A stretch of 64,000 nucleotides of DNA. It comes from Auanema rhodensis. Lineage: Eukaryota > Animalia > Nematoda. The notes beneath the pieces were generated by a model. That model was given only the letters and a program-made list of their open reading frames with translations. It searched no databases and had not been told where the DNA came from. The stretch covers positions 7,254,001-7,318,000 of the forward strand of contig OZ059894.1 of NCBI GenBank assembly GCA_964057225.1. Reading direction: 5' to 3'. Shown piece after piece: positions 54,284-63,569 of the stretch. The first letter of the stretch is position 1. Each line of letters starts with the position of its first letter. The position numbers were made by a program, and so were the translations under genes.

Positions 54284-55353
54284 GTAATATTCAATTTATT
54301 AAAAATTGATAAATCTATTGAATGATTTTATTTTGTTTATGTTCTCAATGTCGTGAGCAAACCTATCTATATTAGTTGTTTTGCTATTTTATTGATTACT
54401 AATCAGAATGCAGGTTGTGAACAGGAAAAAAAATTATCAAAATAGACAGTTCGACATAATTTGAAAAGTTATTTTTATTAATTGATCGATGTTTTCTTTC
54501 AATTACTTATATACATATTTTTTATGGACTTTTCTAAAAAAAATATATATATATATATACTAAGGTTGAATCATATTAATAAATTTATTTTCATTTATGC
54601 ATGATGTATACTTAAATCAATTTATGTCCCATTTCTATATATCAGAATGCAATAAGCGCTGTTATTGATTTTTTGATAACTTAATTAACATATTTATGCG
54701 TATACAAATTTCACGTGATTTAACGTGACCATGATTCCGTTAGCGTTTTCTCATTTTTCTCCATTCGTCGTCATAGCATGGTCGGTATGTTAACTTTTAT
54801 TTCAATTGTATTACTTTTCTTTTCGAAGAATTGTATATGTCATTTTTCGCTATATCATTGGTAATGTTTTGTTTGACTTTTTTCCCGTGCTCCATTTTTG
54901 ATAACATTTTAAAGCTGGCATGATTTTTTTGTGATCTCGAATCAATAACTTATCCAGCAAACTGGTAATTACACTATCTTCTCTTGGACTTTATCTTTTT
55001 TTCGATCGTTCTGTATTCTGGTGAGCATAGTATAGATTGTTAATTTTGGTAGTTACCTGCATATGTTTTATATTTTAGCGATTTTCATTACATAACCCCT
55101 CTTATTATTATTCGGCTCAGATATTTTTTGTGCTGAATATACTTTTTTTTATATCATTTATGGTTCTTATCTCACAAACATGGAGAAAACATAATTGCTT
55201 CTTTCTTTTTTTCTCTCATTCTCTATTCTTTCATTCTAACTCTTTTTCTTTCACACCCTTCCTCTCTTTTAATCCTTATAATAATTGTAATATTTCTTTA
55301 CACCGTAAATTTCTAAATCATTCTTAGTGGTCTGTGTTGACATTATCAATCTT

Positions 55354-55540
55354 ATGGGTTGTGGTCCTAGTGCAGAGGAACAAGTGGATAATGGGAGAAA
55401 TCAGAGGAACTTGGCAATTGCAGAAGCTTTAAAGGAATGCCGGAGTTCCATTAGAAGTAAAAAGTATATTGTGAACACAGAATCTAGTTATCGTCAAAAT
55501 CCATACGAGGATCTCTACAGTCAAAGATTGAATCCATTTG
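55354..55540 (+). CDS. rme-1: Candidate rme-1 alternative first exon B (MGCGPS...RLNPF)
   Basis: 62 codons plus 1 nt, acceptor-like ttcttag at 55327 upstream, donor G|GTGCGT, phase 1 in frame with 60649. Confidence 0.65.
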
Positions 55541-56632
55541 GTGCGTAATTCTATGACTCTATCGTTTAAGAGTTCACTTTTAAAACGCTTAACAGATTAT
55601 TTTGCTTTATTGCTATCTTTTGACATTCCCTAATTTTTCCCACATTCGATATATTCACTTTTTGAATATTTTATTCCTTCCATTCAGTTAAATTCTTTAA
55701 TTTTGAGTAATGATATGTTTCTTTCAAAAATTTCAAGTATCAAAATGATTTTATTATATATTGATCATTCGTTGCTTGATGACTGGACGGGCCCCGAATT
55801 TTTTGCTTTTAGTTTTGTAAGGTTTCATCTGTCCATGAAAAATCGCCACAAGCTGTCATGATGGTTGATGATTATCAAGGCCCTCTAATCATTAAAATGA
55901 CATTCTTTTTTTAATGCATAGCGCATCTAATTTCTTTGCTTAGTTAAAAATTTCAAAACATCAGATAGTTATCATTTCCGGCCTAGAGATTGTTTTATAA
56001 CCATCAATTTGGCTCAGTTTCTTTTGACTTTGGAAATAATCTATCGATATATCCTTTTGTATATATTACATTGTTCTCTTCTTGTCCAAACTATGTTCTT
56101 TCACAACTTCACCAACTAATTTTGTTCCATTTATATATACATTTGATGTGTACTTTGTTTAATTGATTTTTTCATATAATGATGATCCTCGACCTTTGCT
56201 ATTCCTTCCCTATCTGGTAATAATGGATTAACTTATTTCTTATAGCTAATACTTTTAAATCTTACGGACATTGTAACGTTTTTGATATCAGGGAATCATT
56301 TAATCGCAAAAACCAGGAGAAAAAAATCTCATAAATGTCAACTGCATTTTTTTAGTCACTTCTTATCACTGGCTTATTCACATCTTTGAATAGTTGCTAC
56401 GAGTTTCATTTTTCCTGCTAACTGTAGTTTTCTCTCTTTCTCTGCGCGCTCTATCATTAGTTTTTGTTCACCTTGCCTTTTGCTTTTCCTTGTTACACCC
56501 TCCCATCATTTCTTTTACCACTATTGTCACCCAAGGGTCTTATTGAGCCTTTCACAATCTGTTTTATCTCGATCTCACCGCGAGCTATTTCATCGCTGAG
56601 ATTGGAATTAATAGTATTGCACTATATTCCTA

Positions 56633-58085
56633 ATGGCATCTGTTATGAAAACTGATCCTCTTCACTTGGAATGTGATGACAGTTCGGCAATCGATCAGCC
56701 TGTTGCTCAACAAGTTGTAGTTTCTACTACAATGAAAAATGTGGATACTATGAAGTCTGCTCCATCCTCCGAATCTAAAGAAACTGTAGCTCTAGAAAAC
56801 GAGGCCAATCTTCGCGATTCTCTCGTCGTTTCTCCATCCGGGGAAAGTAGTATGACAGCATCAGGAGTTTGCTCTTCAGATTCATTTGAAGATCTTAGCA
56901 GAGATGCGGACAATGAAGAACCATTGCCTGACAACAATGCGATCGATGCCCATGATTCATCCAACATTCAGTCGTCATGCTCACCTAATGCGAACGTTCC
57001 GGAAACTGTGGAATCAGAAAAAATATTTGAAGATTCTTTACTAACCTCTGCAATGGCCCACGATCCTATTCAAGTGGAGCCCAGAGAGCATATTGAGCCA
57101 ATTGTCTCATGTGAATCACTATCTTCTATCGAACCTAATGTACAAGCAGAAACAGTTCAATCTATTGAACCCTCTGTTGAAGTTGAAGATGTTTCTCCAA
57201 TAGATGTGTCTCATTCTTTCACTGAATCAACATCAGTTGAAAGTTCGGTAAAAGAGGAAATTGCCAGTTTCGAGGTTTGCGATGTTATATCAGGTGTTGA
57301 TGAATCAGCAGATTTTGTATCAGAATCTTCACAGTCCCCTGAAGATACTACTACCATGCTTTCAAAGAAATTTGATAGTGAACCGATAATTGAACATAAG
57401 CTCGACACTTTTGAGGATACTGAAACATCAGCTAGTGAAACAATTCTGGATGACAGCCAACCATTGTCGGACTTGGTTGTCTGTAACCAATCACATCCGG
57501 ACACGGTTAACGAGTCAGCTACTCCAACGGACGCGATTGTTGTGTCCCATTCAGATGTGCAAGAAGATGTGAGTGAATCCAAGTCTATTGTCGATGGTTG
57601 CAACATGCCACAAGCATGTTCGGATAGCATAGCACATGAGGTTGAAGTGATTTCGATTCCTTTGGATGTTTCTACTTCTGAAAAGCCAAATGTTGAAACT
57701 GATGTTACTCCTAGAAGCGAGAACTATGCTGAAGAAAATTCAAAGGAAGAACAAGTGAAAATAGTCGGTACGTTTCCTTCGTTTTTATTTTACCTCTGCC
57801 GATATAGCAGATTAAAATTATATTTTGATATTAATTCGTAACTCATATTTTCAGTAACAGGAGTTTCATCTCCCGAGGAAGAAGCAGAAAAAAGAGAAAC
57901 AGTAACTGAATTACGCAATTCTCCTGTGGTTCCTATGCGCAGGCGCTCAATAATGCAAAATACATCTCCCAGAAATTCTCCTGCTGCCCCACCAAGACGT
58001 CGATCATCAATTTATGCCTCACAAACATCTATCAGCAGAAACTCAACATCTACGTACAGTTTACCTCGAAGTCCACTTGTTCACA
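56633..58085 (+). CDS. rme-1: rme-1 long acidic disordered N-terminal extension (exons 56633-57767 and 57855-58085)
   Basis: Long Ser/Glu/Asp-rich ORF; both donors are phase 1; joins as PLVH|[15 protein letters not shown]. Confidence 0.75.
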
Positions 58086-58957
58086 GTTAGTTTATTGCTC
58101 AATGTTAGGACTTTGATTTTTGCATTATATTATTCGGAGCTCTTGCGTCTAGTCTAGCATATGCCGGTCAAGACTCCGCCGCTTCGTACGGAATACTTAC
58201 ATTGTGAAGGTTGTACAAACAGTCCTTGCACCTCTCACTTGCGGTCTGCTATTTTCTCTCGTTTAGCAACTTCAAGACCTCTGATTTATTCCATTCTTGA
58301 TTCAATTGTAGTGTATTATTTTCTAAAAATTGTAATGACAACTAAAAAGGGTAGGTTGCTATATTCTAATTTTTTATCTATAGACCTACTGCATCTAACA
58401 TTTCTACTACGTATACATTTTTTTTCTGCTCTCTTTTCGTATTTTTTTCTGTACTATCATAACTTTTCTACCTCTCTTTTTAAATCAAATGTACTGCTAC
58501 ATACCTTTTATAACAATTTTAGTCAAGCTAAGACATTTCACTGCTATTTATTTAACGGTTAGAAGATAAGAGACATGTGAAAATGGAGAGAAAGGAGAGA
58601 AGTTGATTCATCGTCGTCTGGTTGCAAAATAACTAGCTATACTTTTGCTCATTCTTGTCCTACCGTCCTACGCATTCCATTCCAGTGACTTCTATTTTTC
58701 GGATTTGAAGCTTGTATACTTGAGGTAGTGACAGTTCTTGTCGTTGCTTGAGGGTTTCTGATAAGAGGCATTTCTTTATCTCCATTTTTCATAGTATCTT
58801 TCTTTCTTTTTTAATTTTTGAGCACACGTATCTGAGACTACGGGACTGATAATTTTGTATTCATATTCTTGTTTCATTACTTGATAATGCGCTTCAACCT
58901 CTTGCAAAGTTCCATTCCCGTTTGGTTTCAGATACTACTTTTCTAATTATATTTAAA

Positions 58958-59003
58958 ATGTTAACATGTGATCGTCCAATCTGGAGAAATGGAGCTGGAT
59001 CAG
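58958..59003 (+). CDS. rme-1: Candidate rme-1 alternative first exon E (MLTCDRPIWRNGAGS)
   Basis: TTTCAG at 58926-58931, aaaATG context, CAG|GTCGTT phase-1 donor. Confidence 0.5.
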
Positions 59004-60680
59004 GTCGTTTCCTGCAATTTAATTTTACAAATACAGCGCGATCAAACGATATCAATATTTACAAATATCAATTGTTTCCTTGATCAAGGCTTGTTCATGC
59101 TTCTGCCTTGGTTATCCAATTTGATTGTGACAAGTTCGAAAATATATTTTCAAAACAATAGTTATCCAGAAATTTGCAGTATTTAAAAGCTCAAACTCCA
59201 GTTTTTATGGCTAATATCTGAACTCCTAGACATTGAATATACATCTTCCTCTGACTCTCTACTTCTTCCAACTCTTCTTCTCTAACACTCGTCTGTCCTT
59301 GTGATATGCTGGACGAGGTCCTTAGTTTGGACTCTATTTCTTTTAGACAAACTGTTTTTCGCCTATGATCGAATAGAACCTTGCTGTGTCAAGAGAAAGG
59401 TCTTATCTGTTGTTGTCCCTAAATCGCTTAATTCGATGTCAACTATCTGTACACATTCATTACGTTAAAGTTTCTGCTTAGTTTCTTCATATTTTTGTGG
59501 ATTCGTCACTGATTATTTTCTTTTCTGCTCATATTGACTCCGTGTAGTTCATACAATCATGAGGTTTGCTAGTTGGCCTGTCATCATGTTTGCCAAATTG
59601 ATTTCTCAACCCATCCTTTTCTTTTTTTAATCATTCCAACGTCGAGGACGCCAACGAATTTGACGATATAGTTTCTGATAGCCAGCCGCTATCTACTTTT
59701 TGTTTTGTTTTTTGCGCTTTTTGTTTCAATATCTCTGTCGATTTCAACCCCTCGTTGACCTCTTTTTCGCTAGCAAACATTGATCAATACTTTCTTTCGT
59801 TATATAATTCATTTGCAAACAGTTACAATGATCTACCTATATAGATGGGATTAATATGATCACCTAATTGCTGATGTGTCATCGATTGAACTCATAGATT
59901 CATCAACGCATCGGGTTTCGTTGTTTCTGTTGAACTGCTTCTCTGCCATTTTGTTATATGTCTGCTCTAAATATTGATCAAAACTTGATACTGAGGCCAA
60001 TGACTTTATCCAAATAAACTAGCAGATTTTATACATATACTTAAAATTTTTTTAACTATTCTGTATTTGTTTCTTTCTTTACGACTTATTCCATATTACT
60101 AAATGATCTTGATGACTCATACGCTAAGGCGAAGTGACCAGCACTACAGGCGGTTTGGCTATTGATGTCATAGTGCTGTGTAGACGATGAATCATTCTGT
60201 TTTTCTTGAATTTATTAGAATTTGAATTGTTCACTTGATAAAAAATATGTTTACTGGTAAATAATCATTTTTGCTTGTGAATTCTTATCAAATTGTCTTG
60301 GTGTAGGTATTTATATAGCGTTGTTGTGTGACCTCTAGCTGAACTAGTAATTCAATTGAATTCTGTCGGATTTTCAACTCATGCAACTTATCCCAATTAC
60401 GTCTTTCTGTATCGATCTTAGTGTTCATTCTTCTACATATCGCGATTTGTGGTTGTCGCGTGGTCTTTATTCTTTAATTTCATGGGTCTTATATTTAAAA
60501 ATCAATTTTTTTGTTCCAACGCGTTAGCTAAATCATTTTCACTTTTAACAAAAAATACCTTTTTTCAACATAACTGCCAGCGAGTTACCGTTATATCACT
60601 AATCACCAATTCATTTCACTTTTTTTTACAATAACTTTACCATTTTAGAAGAGGCAAGCAAACCAGCAAAAAAACGAAGC

Positions 60681-63569
60681 ATGTTTAGCTGGATTGGAGG
60701 AGATTCATCCAAAAAAAAGAACAAGGAGGTTTGATACTTTTATTGAATACTTATGTGTATGAGTTTTAGGTTCTTGAAACCGTTAGCGAAGGTCTCAGAA
60801 AGATTTATAAGCAGAAACTTCATCCACTTGAAGAACACTATAAGTTTCATGAGTTCCACAGTCCTGCTTTAGGTTGATTTATTTAAAAAATTTGTTTACG
60901 AGTTTAAATTCTTAGATGATCCTGATTTTGATGCTAAGCCAATGATTTTGCTTGTTGGACAATATTCCACTGGTAAAACCACATTTATCCGTTTCTTACT
61001 TGAGAAGGTTTGAATACTGACTAGCTTTTTATATATTTAATTTTTTCCAGGACTTCCCTGGTATTCGAATTGGACCAGAACCCACCACTGATCGTTTCAT
61101 TGCTGTCATGCATGGTGATGAGGAAGGTGTTATTCCTGGAAATGCTTTAGTAGTTGATGCCAAGAAGCAGTTTAGAGCTCTTAGCGGGTATAGATGATTT
61201 ATTGATTAAACGCTGATTTATATTTCACTTTTGTAGGTTTGGAAATGCATTCCTTAATCGTTTTCAGTGCTCAACTTTGCCTAATCAAGTTCTTGAAAGT
61301 GTAAGCATTATTGACACTCCAGGAATTCTTTCCGGAGAAAAGCAGAGGTATAACTTTTTTTTCATTTTTCTTGCTTTATTTTACGCGGAAAACAAATTAA
61401 GTCAGGAACTGTCAGCATTATTTTCAAGGACTTTGAATAGGGGGTACATGTGATAATGCTTACTTGAGTTGCGTTTAACCTTGACGCTTGTTTGATAGTA
61501 TTACAAACATTACAGTTATTGAATTGATCAGTCATTAACCTACTATATATTGCGCTTTTTTTCATTGTGTATACATTTATCAGTATCATTGCAGAATTGA
61601 TCGTGGATATGATTTTACGGGTGTCTTAGAATGGTTTGCAGAGAGAGTAGATAGAATCATTCTTTTGTTCGATGCTCATAAACTGGATATCTCTGATGAG
61701 TTCAAACGTTGCATTGAAGCTCTTTCAGGTAACTATCGCAGGTTTTTCAGTTTAATTTGATTTTTTCAATTGCAGGAAATGAGGACAAGATTCGTATTGT
61801 ACTTAACAAGTCTGATATGGTTGATCATCAGCAATTAATGAGAGTGTATGGAGCTTTAATGTGGTCTCTTGGAAAGGTATACTTGATTTTTCTTCTTCAA
61901 TCTATATATTTACAAAATAATCGTTTTGTAGGTTTTCCGTACTCCAGAGGTTGCTCGTGTTTATATAGGTTCTTTCTGGGACCAGCCTCTTCATTACGAT
62001 ATTAACAGGTTTGTAAGCCTAAATTTTTTATATTCATCTTTCTGTTATTCATTAAACGTTTAGCCTGATTTTTTAAATTGTATTATAAAAATTTTCAGAC
62101 GTCTTTTCCAAGATGAACAACAAGATCTGTTCCAAGACCTTCAAGCCTTACCGAGAAATGCTGCTCTACGTAAGCTCAATGACTTAATCAAGAGAGCCCG
62201 CCTGGCTAAGGTATGGTTTTTGTTTCATATCATCTATATATTATATTTGTGTAATTTGATCAATGTTTTTTGTAGTTGTAAGTAATTATATAGGAAACCT
62301 TTTATTAATATTAATTAAACACAGCACGGTTGCATTCATATTTAATATTGGCCAGATATTTATTATATTTTCTTATTCAGGTACACGCTTACATTATTGC
62401 TGAATTGAGAAAGCAAATGCCAACTATGATTGGAAAAGAGAAAAAGAAGAAGGAACTTATTCAAAATCTTGATAAGATTTTCGACCAGCTTCAAGTAAGA
62501 AATCTTTATTTTAAACGTCTAACTTTTCTTTCAGCGGGAGCATAACATTTCTCCAGGAGACTTCCCTGATGTTAACAAGATGAGAGAGAAACTTCAGAAT
62601 CAAGATTTCACCAAGTTCAATCCTATCAAGCCTAAACTTCTCGAAGTTGTCGATGGAATGCTTGCCTCTGATATAGGTAACCATTAGATTAAATCCTTAT
62701 TTCAAAATAATGATATATAGCTCGTTTGATGTCTCAAATTCCCAAAGAAGAGCAAGCCATGGTTGTAAACGGTGGTCCTCATGAACAACCATCAGTTAAA
62801 GGAGGAGCATTTAGTAATGCCCAAGAAACGGAAACTCCATTTGGTTTCGGAAAGGTACTAGCTTCTCTTTTCTGTTTTTTTTAAACTTTTTAATCTATTG
62901 ATAATTCTTGAGTAGTTCACTTTTTTTAGTATAATGATCGTTGGGTAGGTGATAAGTTTCAGTTCAGATTGATCCTTTTTATGCTTTTCTGCAATTCTGT
63001 CGACAGCTTTTTGTATTCCTTGTTGTTCATTGTTTTCTTATAATCTTCTGTTCTGTAAGCCCTCTGTGTCCTGAAACGCTGCCAAAAAGTTTACTGTTAT
63101 ATCCTTATACGTAGCCAAATATCCCTCAGAAGTGCTAATTAGCATATGTAAAACTGAATATGTTTTCAGGGAGAAGGTTTCGACAAGGGAGCCGATGAGA
63201 ATGAATGGGTAGTAAGCAGGGAACGAAATACTGCCGATTCTACATTTAACAGTCTTGGCCCAGTTAATGGATATCTCTCTGGTTTGTATAAGACAAGCCA
63301 CTTTCGATTATTTATAAAATGTTGCAGGACGCATTGCTAAGGAACATATGGTTAAATCTAAGCTTCCAAATGCTGTTCTCGGAAAGATTTGGAAACTGGC
63401 CGATGTTGACAAGGACGGTCAATTAGATAATGACGAGTTCGCTTTGGCTAATTATCTTATCAACCTGAAGCTCGAAGGCCACGAACTTCCAAATGATTTA
63501 CCTGGTCATCTTGTTCCTCCTAGCAAGAGAAATGTTGAGACTGTGTACCCCACACTTGAAGACGAGTAA
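60681..63569 (+). CDS. rme-1: RME-1 / EHD endocytic recycling ATPase, core (shared exon begins 60649)
   Basis: [74 protein letters not shown]-terminal EH domain ([22 protein letters not shown]) and YPTL tail. Confidence 0.97.

What the first reader, a model, noticed from the sequence alone, without database searches (positions are those of the whole stretch)
55354..60683. Predicted dually acylated RME-1/EHD isoform whose splice junction builds an NPFEE self-ligand
Seen: exon 55354-55540 begins MGCGPS and ends ...QNPYEDLYSQRLNPF+g. Joining its phase-1 donor to the shared exon at 60649 (aa gag gca) gives [18 protein letters not shown]. Established: G2/S6 is an N-myristoylation consensus and C3 a typical palmitoylation site; C-terminal EH domains of EHD proteins prefer NPF followed by acidic residues (MICAL-L1 and Rabenosyn-5 type). 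Inference: this isoform is a lipid-anchored EHD that presents an EH ligand, so it could act as its own membrane receptor and nucleate other RME-1 isoforms, or be auto-inhibited. I do not know of an acylated, NPF-bearing EHD isoform having been described.
Basis: partly seen in the sequence, partly recalled or inferred. Interest (0 to 1): 0.85.

Follow-up and report, generated by a model that had tools for sequence, protein, structure and literature searches.

The report
Lipid-anchor-type RME-1/EHD isoform, conserved
A rarely used first exon of this nematode's membrane-recycling gene rme-1 is spliced exactly as predicted and gives a protein with a fatty-acid-anchor start (MGC) and NPF docking motifs; the same isoform is already in the C. 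elegans databases, but its anchor and motifs seem never to have been studied.

Summary
Exon 55354-55540 (MGCGPS...RLNPF+g) is joined to the shared rme-1 exon at 60649. RNA contigs of two samples from one study carry exactly this GT..AG joint, at low depth, so it looks like a minor isoform. The product is a 625-aa RME-1/EHD, 88% identical to C. elegans RME-1 in the body.

It is not lineage-specific. C. elegans has the same first exon (MGCQLC...NPFEK...NPFGGEI+g, phase 1, same shared exon) in the annotated 613-aa isoform NP_001024196.1 and in the 835-aa cDNA 'isoform II' AAK27715.1. I also found the exon unannotated in Caenorhabditis sp. 36 and C. angaria, as MGCGPS in Nippostrongylus, and as MGVCGS in Pristionchus.

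- **MGC start:** it fits the N-myristoylation pattern in all of these species.
- **NPF motifs:** they are kept only in Caenorhabditis and this worm.
- **'NPF-EE built by the junction':** this detail is specific to this worm.

These NPFs are the only ones in nematode RME-1, which lacks the internal PF loop of vertebrate EHDs. No paper I could search, including a 2026 EHD review, mentions acylation of an EHD. Acylation is likely. EH binding, self-nucleation and auto-inhibition are untested.

The parts
55321..55327 (+). Putative trans-splice acceptor (ttcttag) 27 nt before the ATG
   Evidence: Sequence. The X5 contig starts aligning at 55326 after 5 unmatched letters, as expected if a spliced leader ending in ..AG were joined at 55328. 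The letters themselves were not shown, so this is an inference. There is no ATG in 55328-55353.
55354..55540 (+). Alternative first coding exon: MGCGPS...NPYED...RLNPF plus the first base of a split Glu codon. It carries the N-myristoylation/palmitoylation-type start and NPY plus NPF motifs.
   Evidence: RNA contigs of X4 and X5 cover 55339/55326 to 55539. Orthologous exons are in L002, L005, L006 and L001.
55541..60648 (+). Intron of 5108 nt removed in the MGC isoform (GT..AG). It contains the other alternative 5' exons.
   Evidence: Joint.
56633..57767 (+). Large acidic/Ser-rich first coding exon of the long isoform (378 codons, phase-1 donor)
   Evidence: Joint 57767>57855 in all four runs. 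No Pfam family and no sequence homologue. It sits in the same position as C. elegans MESVNSEE... and N. brasiliensis MAVIETEQ....
57855..58085 (+). Second exon of the long isoform (Ser/Pro/Arg-rich), phase-1 donor A|GTTAGT joined to 60649
   Evidence: Joint 58085>60649 in X4, X5 and X6.
58959..59003 (+). Coding end of a further alternative 5' exon (MLTCDRPIWRNGAGS plus a phase-1 G) joined to 60649
   Evidence: Joint ~59003>60649 in X1, with the contig reaching back to 58434. Frame.
60649..60728 (+). Shared exon. Its first two bases, AA, complete the split codon. It reads (E)[26 protein letters not shown] and contains the ATG of the short isoform at 60681.
   Evidence: The same acceptor is used by four different upstream donors. 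The exon start AAGA[AG] is shared with C. elegans, Caenorhabditis sp. 36 and N. brasiliensis.
60770..63569 (+). Thirteen further rme-1 exons (G domain, helical domain, linker, EH domain, C-terminal YPTL, stop at 63567-63569): 60770-60872, 60916-61007, 61051-61187, 61237-61347, 61595-61728, 61776-61876, 61932-62008, 62099-62210, 62381-62494, 62535-62676, 62721-62854, 63170-63281, 63328-63569
   Evidence: Homology-guided model. 487/555 residues are identical to C. elegans RME-1. Pfam EH and DUF5600 hits on exons. Only the first junction (60728/60770) was seen in RNA (loose ends).

Best explanation
The exon is one of at least four alternative 5' exons of the single EHD gene rme-1. All have phase-1 donors and all splice to one shared exon. 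Shown: this one is transcribed and joined to the shared exon. It gives a 625-aa RME-1 whose 72-residue N-terminal extension begins MGCGPS and carries NPYED and NPF-EE, followed by a basic cluster (KPAKKRS) and the normal MFSW start. It is the orthologue of the C. elegans 613-aa isoform. Inferred: after removal of Met1, Gly2 is N-myristoylated and Cys3 is then S-palmitoylated, as in G-alpha subunits and Src-family kinases with MGC starts. A small pool of RME-1 would then be fixed to a membrane independently of ATP-driven lipid binding. More speculative: the disordered tail then presents the only NPF motifs that exist in nematode RME-1 to EHD-type EH domains. The most likely targets are the EH domains of neighbouring RME-1 dimers (in trans), because RME-1 oligomerises and nematode RME-1 lacks the internal PF loop that serves this purpose in vertebrate EHD2. 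On this reading the acylated isoform would seed or stabilise RME-1 assemblies at particular membranes.
For: Transcription and splicing: joint 55540>60649 in two samples. Identity as rme-1: 88% identical body, EH and DUF5600 Pfam hits, and nematode RME-1 proteins as the best database hits. Orthology and conservation of the exon: C. elegans P0040 and P0133 (MGCQLC..NPFEK..NPFGGEI), Caenorhabditis sp. 36 (MGCQPC..NPFDK..NPFGSEF), C. angaria (MGCQPC..NPFFDPES), N. brasiliensis (MGCGPS, no NPF) and P. pacificus (MGVCGS). All have phase-1 donors and lie upstream of the same shared exon. All these starts match G-{EDRKHPFYW}-x(2)-[STAGCN]-{P} and have Cys within three residues of Gly2. The MGC ATG is the first ATG after the putative trans-splice site. 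NPF/NPY occur nowhere else in the protein. The vertebrate KPF loop reads [11 protein letters not shown] in nematodes, and the linker GPF is TPF. The EH domain is 72% identical to vertebrate EHD1, with the [24 protein letters not shown] stretch identical. EHD EH domains prefer NPF followed by acidic residues and also bind internal PF motifs of EHD2. The first motif is followed by E or D in all three species that have two motifs (NPFE, NPFD, NPYED).
Against: There is no protein-level evidence of any kind, and acylation is predicted from a pattern only. The isoform looks minor: contig depth 4-7 against 24-216 for the long isoform and 280-590 for the shared exon, and it is absent from two of four samples, although contig depth is a poor measure. 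NPF is not kept in Nippostrongylus or Pristionchus, and no MGC exon was found in Diploscapter, so NPF and the anchor are separable. Only two acidic residues follow the NPF here, and a basic cluster comes next, unlike MICAL-L1's NPFEEEEED. The first motif here is NPY, not NPF. AlphaFold2 gave pLDDT of about 30 over residues 1-76 of the C. elegans isoform with no local rise at the NPFs, but the model was poor overall. The RME-1 EH domain was a weak, selective binder in a yeast two-hybrid study.
Confidence: 0.72

Rival explanations
1. The lipid anchor is real, but the NPF motifs are ligands for other EH-domain proteins (EHS-1/Eps15, ITSN-1/intersectin, REPS-1), tying a membrane-fixed RME-1 pool to the endocytic machinery rather than to RME-1 itself.
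For: C. elegans has four other EH-domain protein genes with broad NPF binding, whereas the RME-1 EH domain was the most selective and weakest binder. The second NPF in Caenorhabditis is followed by G-G/G-S, not by acidic residues.
Against: The first motif is NPF-E/D or NPY-ED, and here the second is NPF-EE, which is the EHD-type flank. Nematode RME-1 has no other PF ligand for its own EH domain.
Confidence: 0.25
2. The N-terminal NPF folds back on the EH domain of the same dimer and keeps this isoform auto-inhibited until it is released, in the way the linker GPF holds the EH domain on top of the G domain in EHD2.
For: There is precedent for intramolecular EH-PF contacts and auto-inhibition in EHD2. 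The tail is long (72 residues) and predicted to be disordered, so it could reach.
Against: Nothing here speaks directly for a cis contact over a trans contact. AlphaFold2 showed no docking, though at low quality. A tail pinned to the bilayer by two acyl chains is poorly placed to reach an EH domain sitting on top of the G domain.
Confidence: 0.12
3. Only the acyl anchor matters. The NPF motifs are short-motif noise in a fast-evolving disordered leader, and the isoform simply places RME-1 on the plasma membrane or a raft-like domain in particular cells.
For: Nippostrongylus (MGCGPS, and a mini-exon MGNVCNS), Haemonchus (MGNTCA) and Pristionchus (MGVCGS) keep an acylation-type start without NPF. 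The rest of the exon is poorly conserved.
Against: NPF or NPY is retained at matching positions in four species of two genera despite heavy divergence and indels around it, and twice in three of them. In N. brasiliensis the next exon has QPFE and DPF at the corresponding place.
Confidence: 0.2
4. The joint is low-level splicing noise or an untranslated alternative leader, with no protein made.
For: Low contig depth, seen in two of four samples, one study only.
Against: The open frame, the MGC start and the phase-1 donor are conserved over several nematode genera. The isoform is annotated in C. elegans, and the exon heads a deposited C. elegans cDNA.
Confidence: 0.04

Closest known systems
C. 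elegans RME-1 613-aa isoform (NP_001024196.1, UniProt Q8WSP1, CCD72162.1) and the 835-aa cDNA 'receptor-mediated endocytosis 1 isoform II' (AAK27715.1)
   Same: The first coding exon starts MGC and lies upstream of the long acidic exon. It contains NPF motifs near its end and stops on a phase-1 G before a GTG donor. It splices to the shared exon that starts AAGA.. and gives Glu-Glu, then a basic cluster, then MFSW.
   Different: The C. elegans exon is shorter (47 against 62 codons). It has two true NPFs (here NPY plus NPF), a second Cys at position 6 instead of Ser, and four residues (GGEI) between the last NPF and the junction. It can also splice into the long acidic exon (835-aa form). Here no in-frame acceptor exists for that.
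Vertebrate EHD2 internal EH-domain ligands (linker GPF; G-domain loop KPFxxxNPF)
   Same: An EHD protein carries PF-type motifs that its own EH domains can bind, proposed to control auto-inhibition and oligomerisation.
   Different: Those motifs are internal and present in every molecule. Here the motifs sit on an isoform-specific, probably lipid-anchored N-terminal tail, and the nematode G-domain loop has no PF motif at all.
Dually acylated MGC proteins (G-alpha subunits, Src-family kinases such as Lck and Fyn)
   Same: Met-Gly-Cys start with a small residue at position 6: the textbook context for N-myristoylation followed by palmitoylation of Cys3 (own knowledge; pattern check).
   Different: No EHD or dynamin-superfamily member is known to me to use it. 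The 2026 EHD review contains neither 'myristoyl' nor 'palmitoyl'.
EHD1 partners with NPF plus an acidic cluster (MICAL-L1 NPFEEEEED, Rabenosyn-5, Rab11-FIP2, syndapins; AMPH-1 in C. elegans)
   Same: NPF followed directly by Glu-Glu.
   Different: There are only two acidic residues, followed by Lys/Arg, and the motif is on the EHD itself rather than on a partner.

Membership tests
EHD/RME-1 family (dynamin-like ATPase with C-terminal EH domain) | N-terminal G domain with P-loop GQYSTGKT, helical domain, and a single C-terminal EH domain | tested here: met
   The spliced model of 553 body residues is 487/555 identical to C. elegans RME-1 and 372/540 to a vertebrate EHD1. Pfam EH (E 4.7e-15) and DUF5600 (E 3.8e-16) hit single exons. 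The best database hits carry EHD_N, Dynamin_N, DUF5600 and EH.
Orthologue of the C. elegans RME-1 'MGC-exon' isoform | Alternative first exon upstream of the long acidic exon, MGC start, phase-1 donor, joined to the shared exon before MFSW | tested here: met
   Collinear exon order and identical phase and junction codon. The peptide alignment shows shared MGC, NP[FY]-[DE], NPF and EE-basic-MFSW.
N-myristoylated proteins (NMT substrates) | Gly at position 2 of the translated product, in the context G-{EDRKHPFYW}-x(2)-[STAGCN]-{P} | tested here: met
   MGCGPSA matches, as do the C. elegans, Caenorhabditis sp. 36, C. angaria, N. brasiliensis and P. pacificus starts. There is no upstream ATG after the putative trans-splice site.
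N-myristoylated proteins (NMT substrates) | Covalent myristate on Gly2 | not testable with these tools
   This needs metabolic labelling or mass spectrometry. A C. elegans click-chemistry list of 40 proteins exists (PMC8404530, Table S1), but the table is not held.
Dually acylated MGC-type proteins | Cys next to the myristoylated Gly, and palmitate on it | tested here: inconclusive
   Cys3 is present and conserved (Cys4 or Cys5 in Pristionchus and in the strongylid mini-exons). Palmitoylation itself cannot be tested here.
EHD-type EH-domain ligands | NPF followed by a run of acidic residues | tested here: inconclusive
   NPF-E-E is present, but with only two acidic residues and then KPAKKR. 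The upstream motif is NPY-E-D. In Caenorhabditis the first motif is NPF-E/D and the second is NPF-G. Known strong ligands have three or more acidic residues.
EHD-type EH-domain ligands | Measurable binding to an EHD EH domain | not testable with these tools
   AlphaFold2 of the C. elegans isoform gave a disordered N-terminus and a poor model. No complex prediction or binding assay was available.

The most novel reading that the evidence does not exclude
Nematodes have moved the EH-domain self-ligand of EHD proteins from the G-domain loop, where vertebrate EHDs carry their PF motif(s), with the NPF in EHD2 only, to an isoform-specific, doubly acylated N-terminal tail. A small, membrane-fixed pool of RME-1 would then act as the seed that captures the EH domains of the abundant unanchored isoforms and decides where RME-1 scaffolds assemble.
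Probability: 0.15. Interest if true: 0.75.

Novelty: new member of a known kind. Interest (0 to 1): 0.5.

Why it matters
EHD/RME-1 proteins are thought to reach membranes through ATP-dependent lipid binding and NPF-bearing partners. A conserved isoform that carries its own lipid anchor and the family's preferred docking motif would add a built-in targeting or seeding mode. It would also give a reason for the long-known but unexplained multiplicity of rme-1 5' exons. Because the same exon exists in C. elegans, the idea can be tested directly with standard knock-ins (G2A, C3A, NPF>APA). For this genome, the practical result is a verified gene model with at least four alternative 5' exons.

Tried and rejected
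- **Peptide searches.** phmmer of the 62-aa peptide against 1.84 billion representatives gave only a spurious repeat protein. This says little, because isoforms collapse into one cluster. Word-index searches with the peptide and with the 378-aa long exon gave nothing.
- **Exact look-ups.** Look-ups of the last-exon ORF and of P0040 were not on record.
- **Profile alignment.** A stacked alignment that included the MGC peptide (A1) was abandoned because MAFFT shredded it. The profile actually used (A2) hit only through the EH exon.
- **MGC exon into the long exon.** I looked for an in-frame splice here, as in the C. elegans 835-aa form, and rejected it. There is a TAG at 56612-56614, the only nearby acceptor is out of frame, and RNA contigs run unspliced upstream of 56633.
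- **C. elegans isoform-c exon.** No orthologue of the MYNFF... exon was found in the window.
- **Plasmodium EHD.** I followed a lead that it might be myristoylated and found no support.
- **Structure prediction.** AlphaFold2 of the C. elegans isoform was too poor to judge docking.
- **Other species.** Diploscapter pachys has no MGC exon in the 4.5 kb between the upstream gene and MFSW. Steinernema hermaphroditum has an MGCLTS ORF 230 nt upstream of MFSW, but I could not find a convincing splice.
- **Papers not held.** Grant et al. 2001, Grant and Caplan 2008, Shi et al. 2007 and Pant et al. 2009 could not be read.


Full report
**1. What is in the sequence**

An ATG at 55354 opens a 62-codon frame: MGCGPSAEEQVDNGRNQRNLAIAEALKECRSSIRSKKYIVNTESSYRQNPYEDLYSQRLNPF. 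It ends on one extra G before GTGCGT at 55541. At 60648/60649 a ttttag acceptor precedes AA GAG GCA..., so the join reads [18 protein letters not shown]. A ttcttag lies 27 nt before the ATG, and there is no ATG between it and the start codon.

**2. Is the junction used?**

The two searches for sequencing runs found only six runs of one 2019 study, labelled 'RNA?'. The contigs carry exact GT..AG joints, so they are RNA.

- The predicted joint 55540>60649 is present in X4 (contig 229 nt, depth 4.3) and X5 (246 nt, depth 6.6), without mismatches.
- Both contigs stop 27-28 letters into the shared exon. That is where a 31-mer assembly graph must branch, because three other upstream donors use the same acceptor.
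- The other donors are 58085 (long isoform; X4, X5, X6), 58349 (X1) and about 59003 (X1).
- The X5 contig begins with 5 unmatched letters and then aligns from 55326. This fits a spliced leader joined at 55328, but I could not see the letters.
- Depths suggest a minor isoform (4-7, against 24-216 for the long-isoform exons and about 280-590 for the shared exon). X1 and X6 lack it. The tool warns that contig depth is a poor measure.

**3. What gene is it?**

Guided by C. elegans RME-1, I built a 15-exon model ending at 63569.

- The MGC isoform is 625 aa.
- Its 553-residue body is 487/555 identical to C. elegans RME-1 and 372/540 identical to a vertebrate EHD1.
- Single exons hit Pfam EH and DUF5600.
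- The protein ends in YPTL, the counterpart of the C. elegans YPSL.
- Earlier notes of this scan call the genome Auanema-type. I did not verify the species.

**4. Conservation**

Direct searches with the peptide found nothing. The word index is length-limited and the representative library collapses isoforms, so this means little. A profile whose informative part was the last EH exon retrieved nematode RME-1 proteins of all lengths. Among them is C. elegans P0040 (613 aa), which begins MGCQLCRPTVTDEDIDKTLVIFRKKSTNPFEKTSERFSSTNPFGGEIEEGQKKKKTRS-MFSW.

Its cluster lists NP_001024196.1, Q8WSP1 and CCD72162.1. It also lists the 835-aa cDNA AAK27715.1, 'receptor-mediated endocytosis 1 isoform II', which starts with the same exon spliced into the long acidic exon.

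I then fetched genomic loci from other species.

| Species (locus) | Exon reading | Donor or note |
|---|---|---|
| C. elegans (L002) | ...NPFGGEI+G | GTGAGT, phase 1; shared exon starts ttttcag\|AAGAAGGA, as here |
| Caenorhabditis sp. 36 (L005) | MGCQPCRPTVIDEEPSDKIFARRSTNPFDKSSADRFSTNPFGSEF+G | GTGAGT; unannotated |
| C. angaria (L006) | MGCQPCKPVLTETDAPKAIYPNPFFDPES+G | GTGAGT; unannotated |
| N. brasiliensis (L001) | isoforms of 1003 and 1019 aa start MGCGPS, identical to this worm for six residues | no NPF in that exon; the next exon has QPFE and DPF; also has a mini-exon MGNVCNS |
| H. contortus (L003) | mini-exon MGNTCA | MGC exon not found within the 10-kb flank |
| P. pacificus (L004) | isoform starts MGVCGS | no NPF |
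| D. pachys (L007) | no such exon found | |
| S. hermaphroditum (L008) | MGCLTS ORF upstream of MFSW | splicing unclear |

All the MG-starts in the table fit the PROSITE-type N-myristoylation pattern, and all have a Cys within three residues of Gly2. The acylation-type start is therefore old and widespread in clade V nematodes. The NPF pair is shared by Caenorhabditis and this worm.

**5. The 'junction-built NPFEE'**

The Glu-Glu comes from the split codon (G+AA) plus the first full codon of the shared exon. It follows every upstream exon that ends on a phase-1 G: C. elegans MSNLF-EE...DYE-EE...NPFGGEI-EE. Only in this worm does the exon end exactly on NPF, so that the junction supplies the acidic flank. 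In the species with two motifs the first one carries its own acidic residue (NPFE, NPFD, and here NPYED).

**6. Context that makes the NPFs interesting**

- In the whole 625-aa protein, and in C. elegans RME-1, the only NPF/NPY motifs are those of this exon.
- Vertebrate EHDs carry KPF or RPF in a G-domain loop, and EHD2 carries KPFxxxNPF. They also carry GPF in the linker, and these are proposed internal ligands of the EH domain that control auto-inhibition and oligomerisation.
- Nematode RME-1 reads [11 protein letters not shown] in that loop and TPF in the linker.
- The EH domain itself is 72% identical to vertebrate EHD1, with the stretch [24 protein letters not shown] unchanged. The known preference for NPF plus acidic residues should therefore hold.

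**7. Mechanism**

- **Shown:** a conserved, expressed alternative first exon that puts an MGC start and NP[FY] motifs on an otherwise normal RME-1.
- **Inferred with fair confidence:** N-myristoylation of Gly2 and palmitoylation of Cys3, giving a constitutively membrane-bound pool.
- **Inferred with low confidence:** the disordered tail (AlphaFold2 pLDDT about 30 over residues 1-76 of the C. elegans isoform, in a poor model) offers its NPFs to EH domains.

The candidate targets for the NPFs are neighbouring RME-1 dimers (seeding), the same dimer (auto-inhibition), or other EH proteins. I favour binding in trans to RME-1, but nothing here decides between them.

**8. Novelty**

As a sequence the isoform is already in the databases: it is annotated in C. 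elegans, and the exon heads a deposited cDNA, so this is an orthologue in a new species. As a functional idea I found nothing.

- No paper combines EHD or RME-1 with myristoylation or palmitoylation of the protein itself.
- No paper in the library uses 'RME-1 isoforms' or names an isoform other than d.
- Three papers name W06H8.1, and the one I opened cites only W06H8.1a.
- A 175,000-character 2026 review of the family contains neither 'myristoyl' nor 'palmitoyl', and gives one sentence to 'five splice isoforms'.

The primary 2001 paper and the 2008 review were not readable. I therefore cannot exclude that the MGC start was remarked on there.

**9. Verdict**

This is a real, conserved, probably lipid-anchored minor RME-1 isoform. 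The self-ligand idea is plausible and testable but unproven. Interest is moderate: it is not a new kind of gene, but it is an overlooked, conserved feature of a well-studied trafficking protein that can be tested directly in C. elegans.

Noticed in passing
window 58434-59003 and 60649: A further alternative 5' exon is joined to the shared exon in run X1 (contig depth 12). Its end reads MLTCDRPIWRNGAGS plus a phase-1 G, giving a 15-residue unique N-terminus, comparable to the short C. elegans leaders MSNLF-EE and MYNFF...-EE.
   Followed up: partly
window 58086-58349: In run X1 the long-isoform transcript uses a donor at 58349 instead of 58085. The retained 264 nt begin with an in-frame stop (CAC AGT TAG), so this form cannot encode the long isoform. 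It may be a non-productive or 5'-UTR variant.
   Followed up: partly
window 58974-60697: Contigs of X1 (1725 nt) and X4 (60149-60678) run unspliced from the intron into the shared exon. This is either a proximal promoter for the short isoform or retained intron.
   Followed up: no
window 56633-58085: The long isoform's 455-residue N-terminal region (acidic/Ser-rich, then Ser/Pro/Arg-rich) has no Pfam family and no detectable sequence homologue. Exons with the same position and the same composition exist in C. elegans, Caenorhabditis sp. 36 and N. brasiliensis. It looks like a fast-evolving disordered region kept by position.
   Followed up: partly
L001 30955 (N. brasiliensis) and L003 26524 (H. 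contortus): Strongylid rme-1 has a second, tiny alternative first exon, MGNVCNS / MGNTCA (also seen as MGNMCDS in a Logan-derived protein, P0148). It also fits the myristoylation pattern with a nearby Cys. This is a second acylation-type start in the same gene.
   Followed up: partly
L001 6410-6470 (N. brasiliensis): The annotated 1003- and 1019-aa models read ...LLDPF-LFLFIAIFLYWS-MAVIETEQ. They run straight through a hydrophobic stretch into the ATG of the long exon. This may be 5'-UTR translated only when the MGC exon is spliced on, or a model error.
   Followed up: no
L005 16639-18483 (Caenorhabditis sp. 36): A second, compact gene for a 555-aa EHD lies directly downstream of rme-1 on the same strand, apparently a tandem paralogue with few introns.
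   Followed up: no
L007 19820-20972 (D. pachys) and beyond the window's end: A ChaC gene follows rme-1 in Diploscapter.
   Followed up: no
proteins P0012, P0021, P0024 (Onchocerca, Ascaris): Clade III RME-1 models have Cys-rich alternative N-termini (MCACEQ..., MCGDNAD...) instead of MGC. These may be palmitoylation-only starts or mispredicted starts.
   Followed up: no
window 63550-63561: The C-terminus keeps a YPTL motif (C. elegans has YPSL), the type of motif that binds Alix/ALX-1.
   Followed up: no
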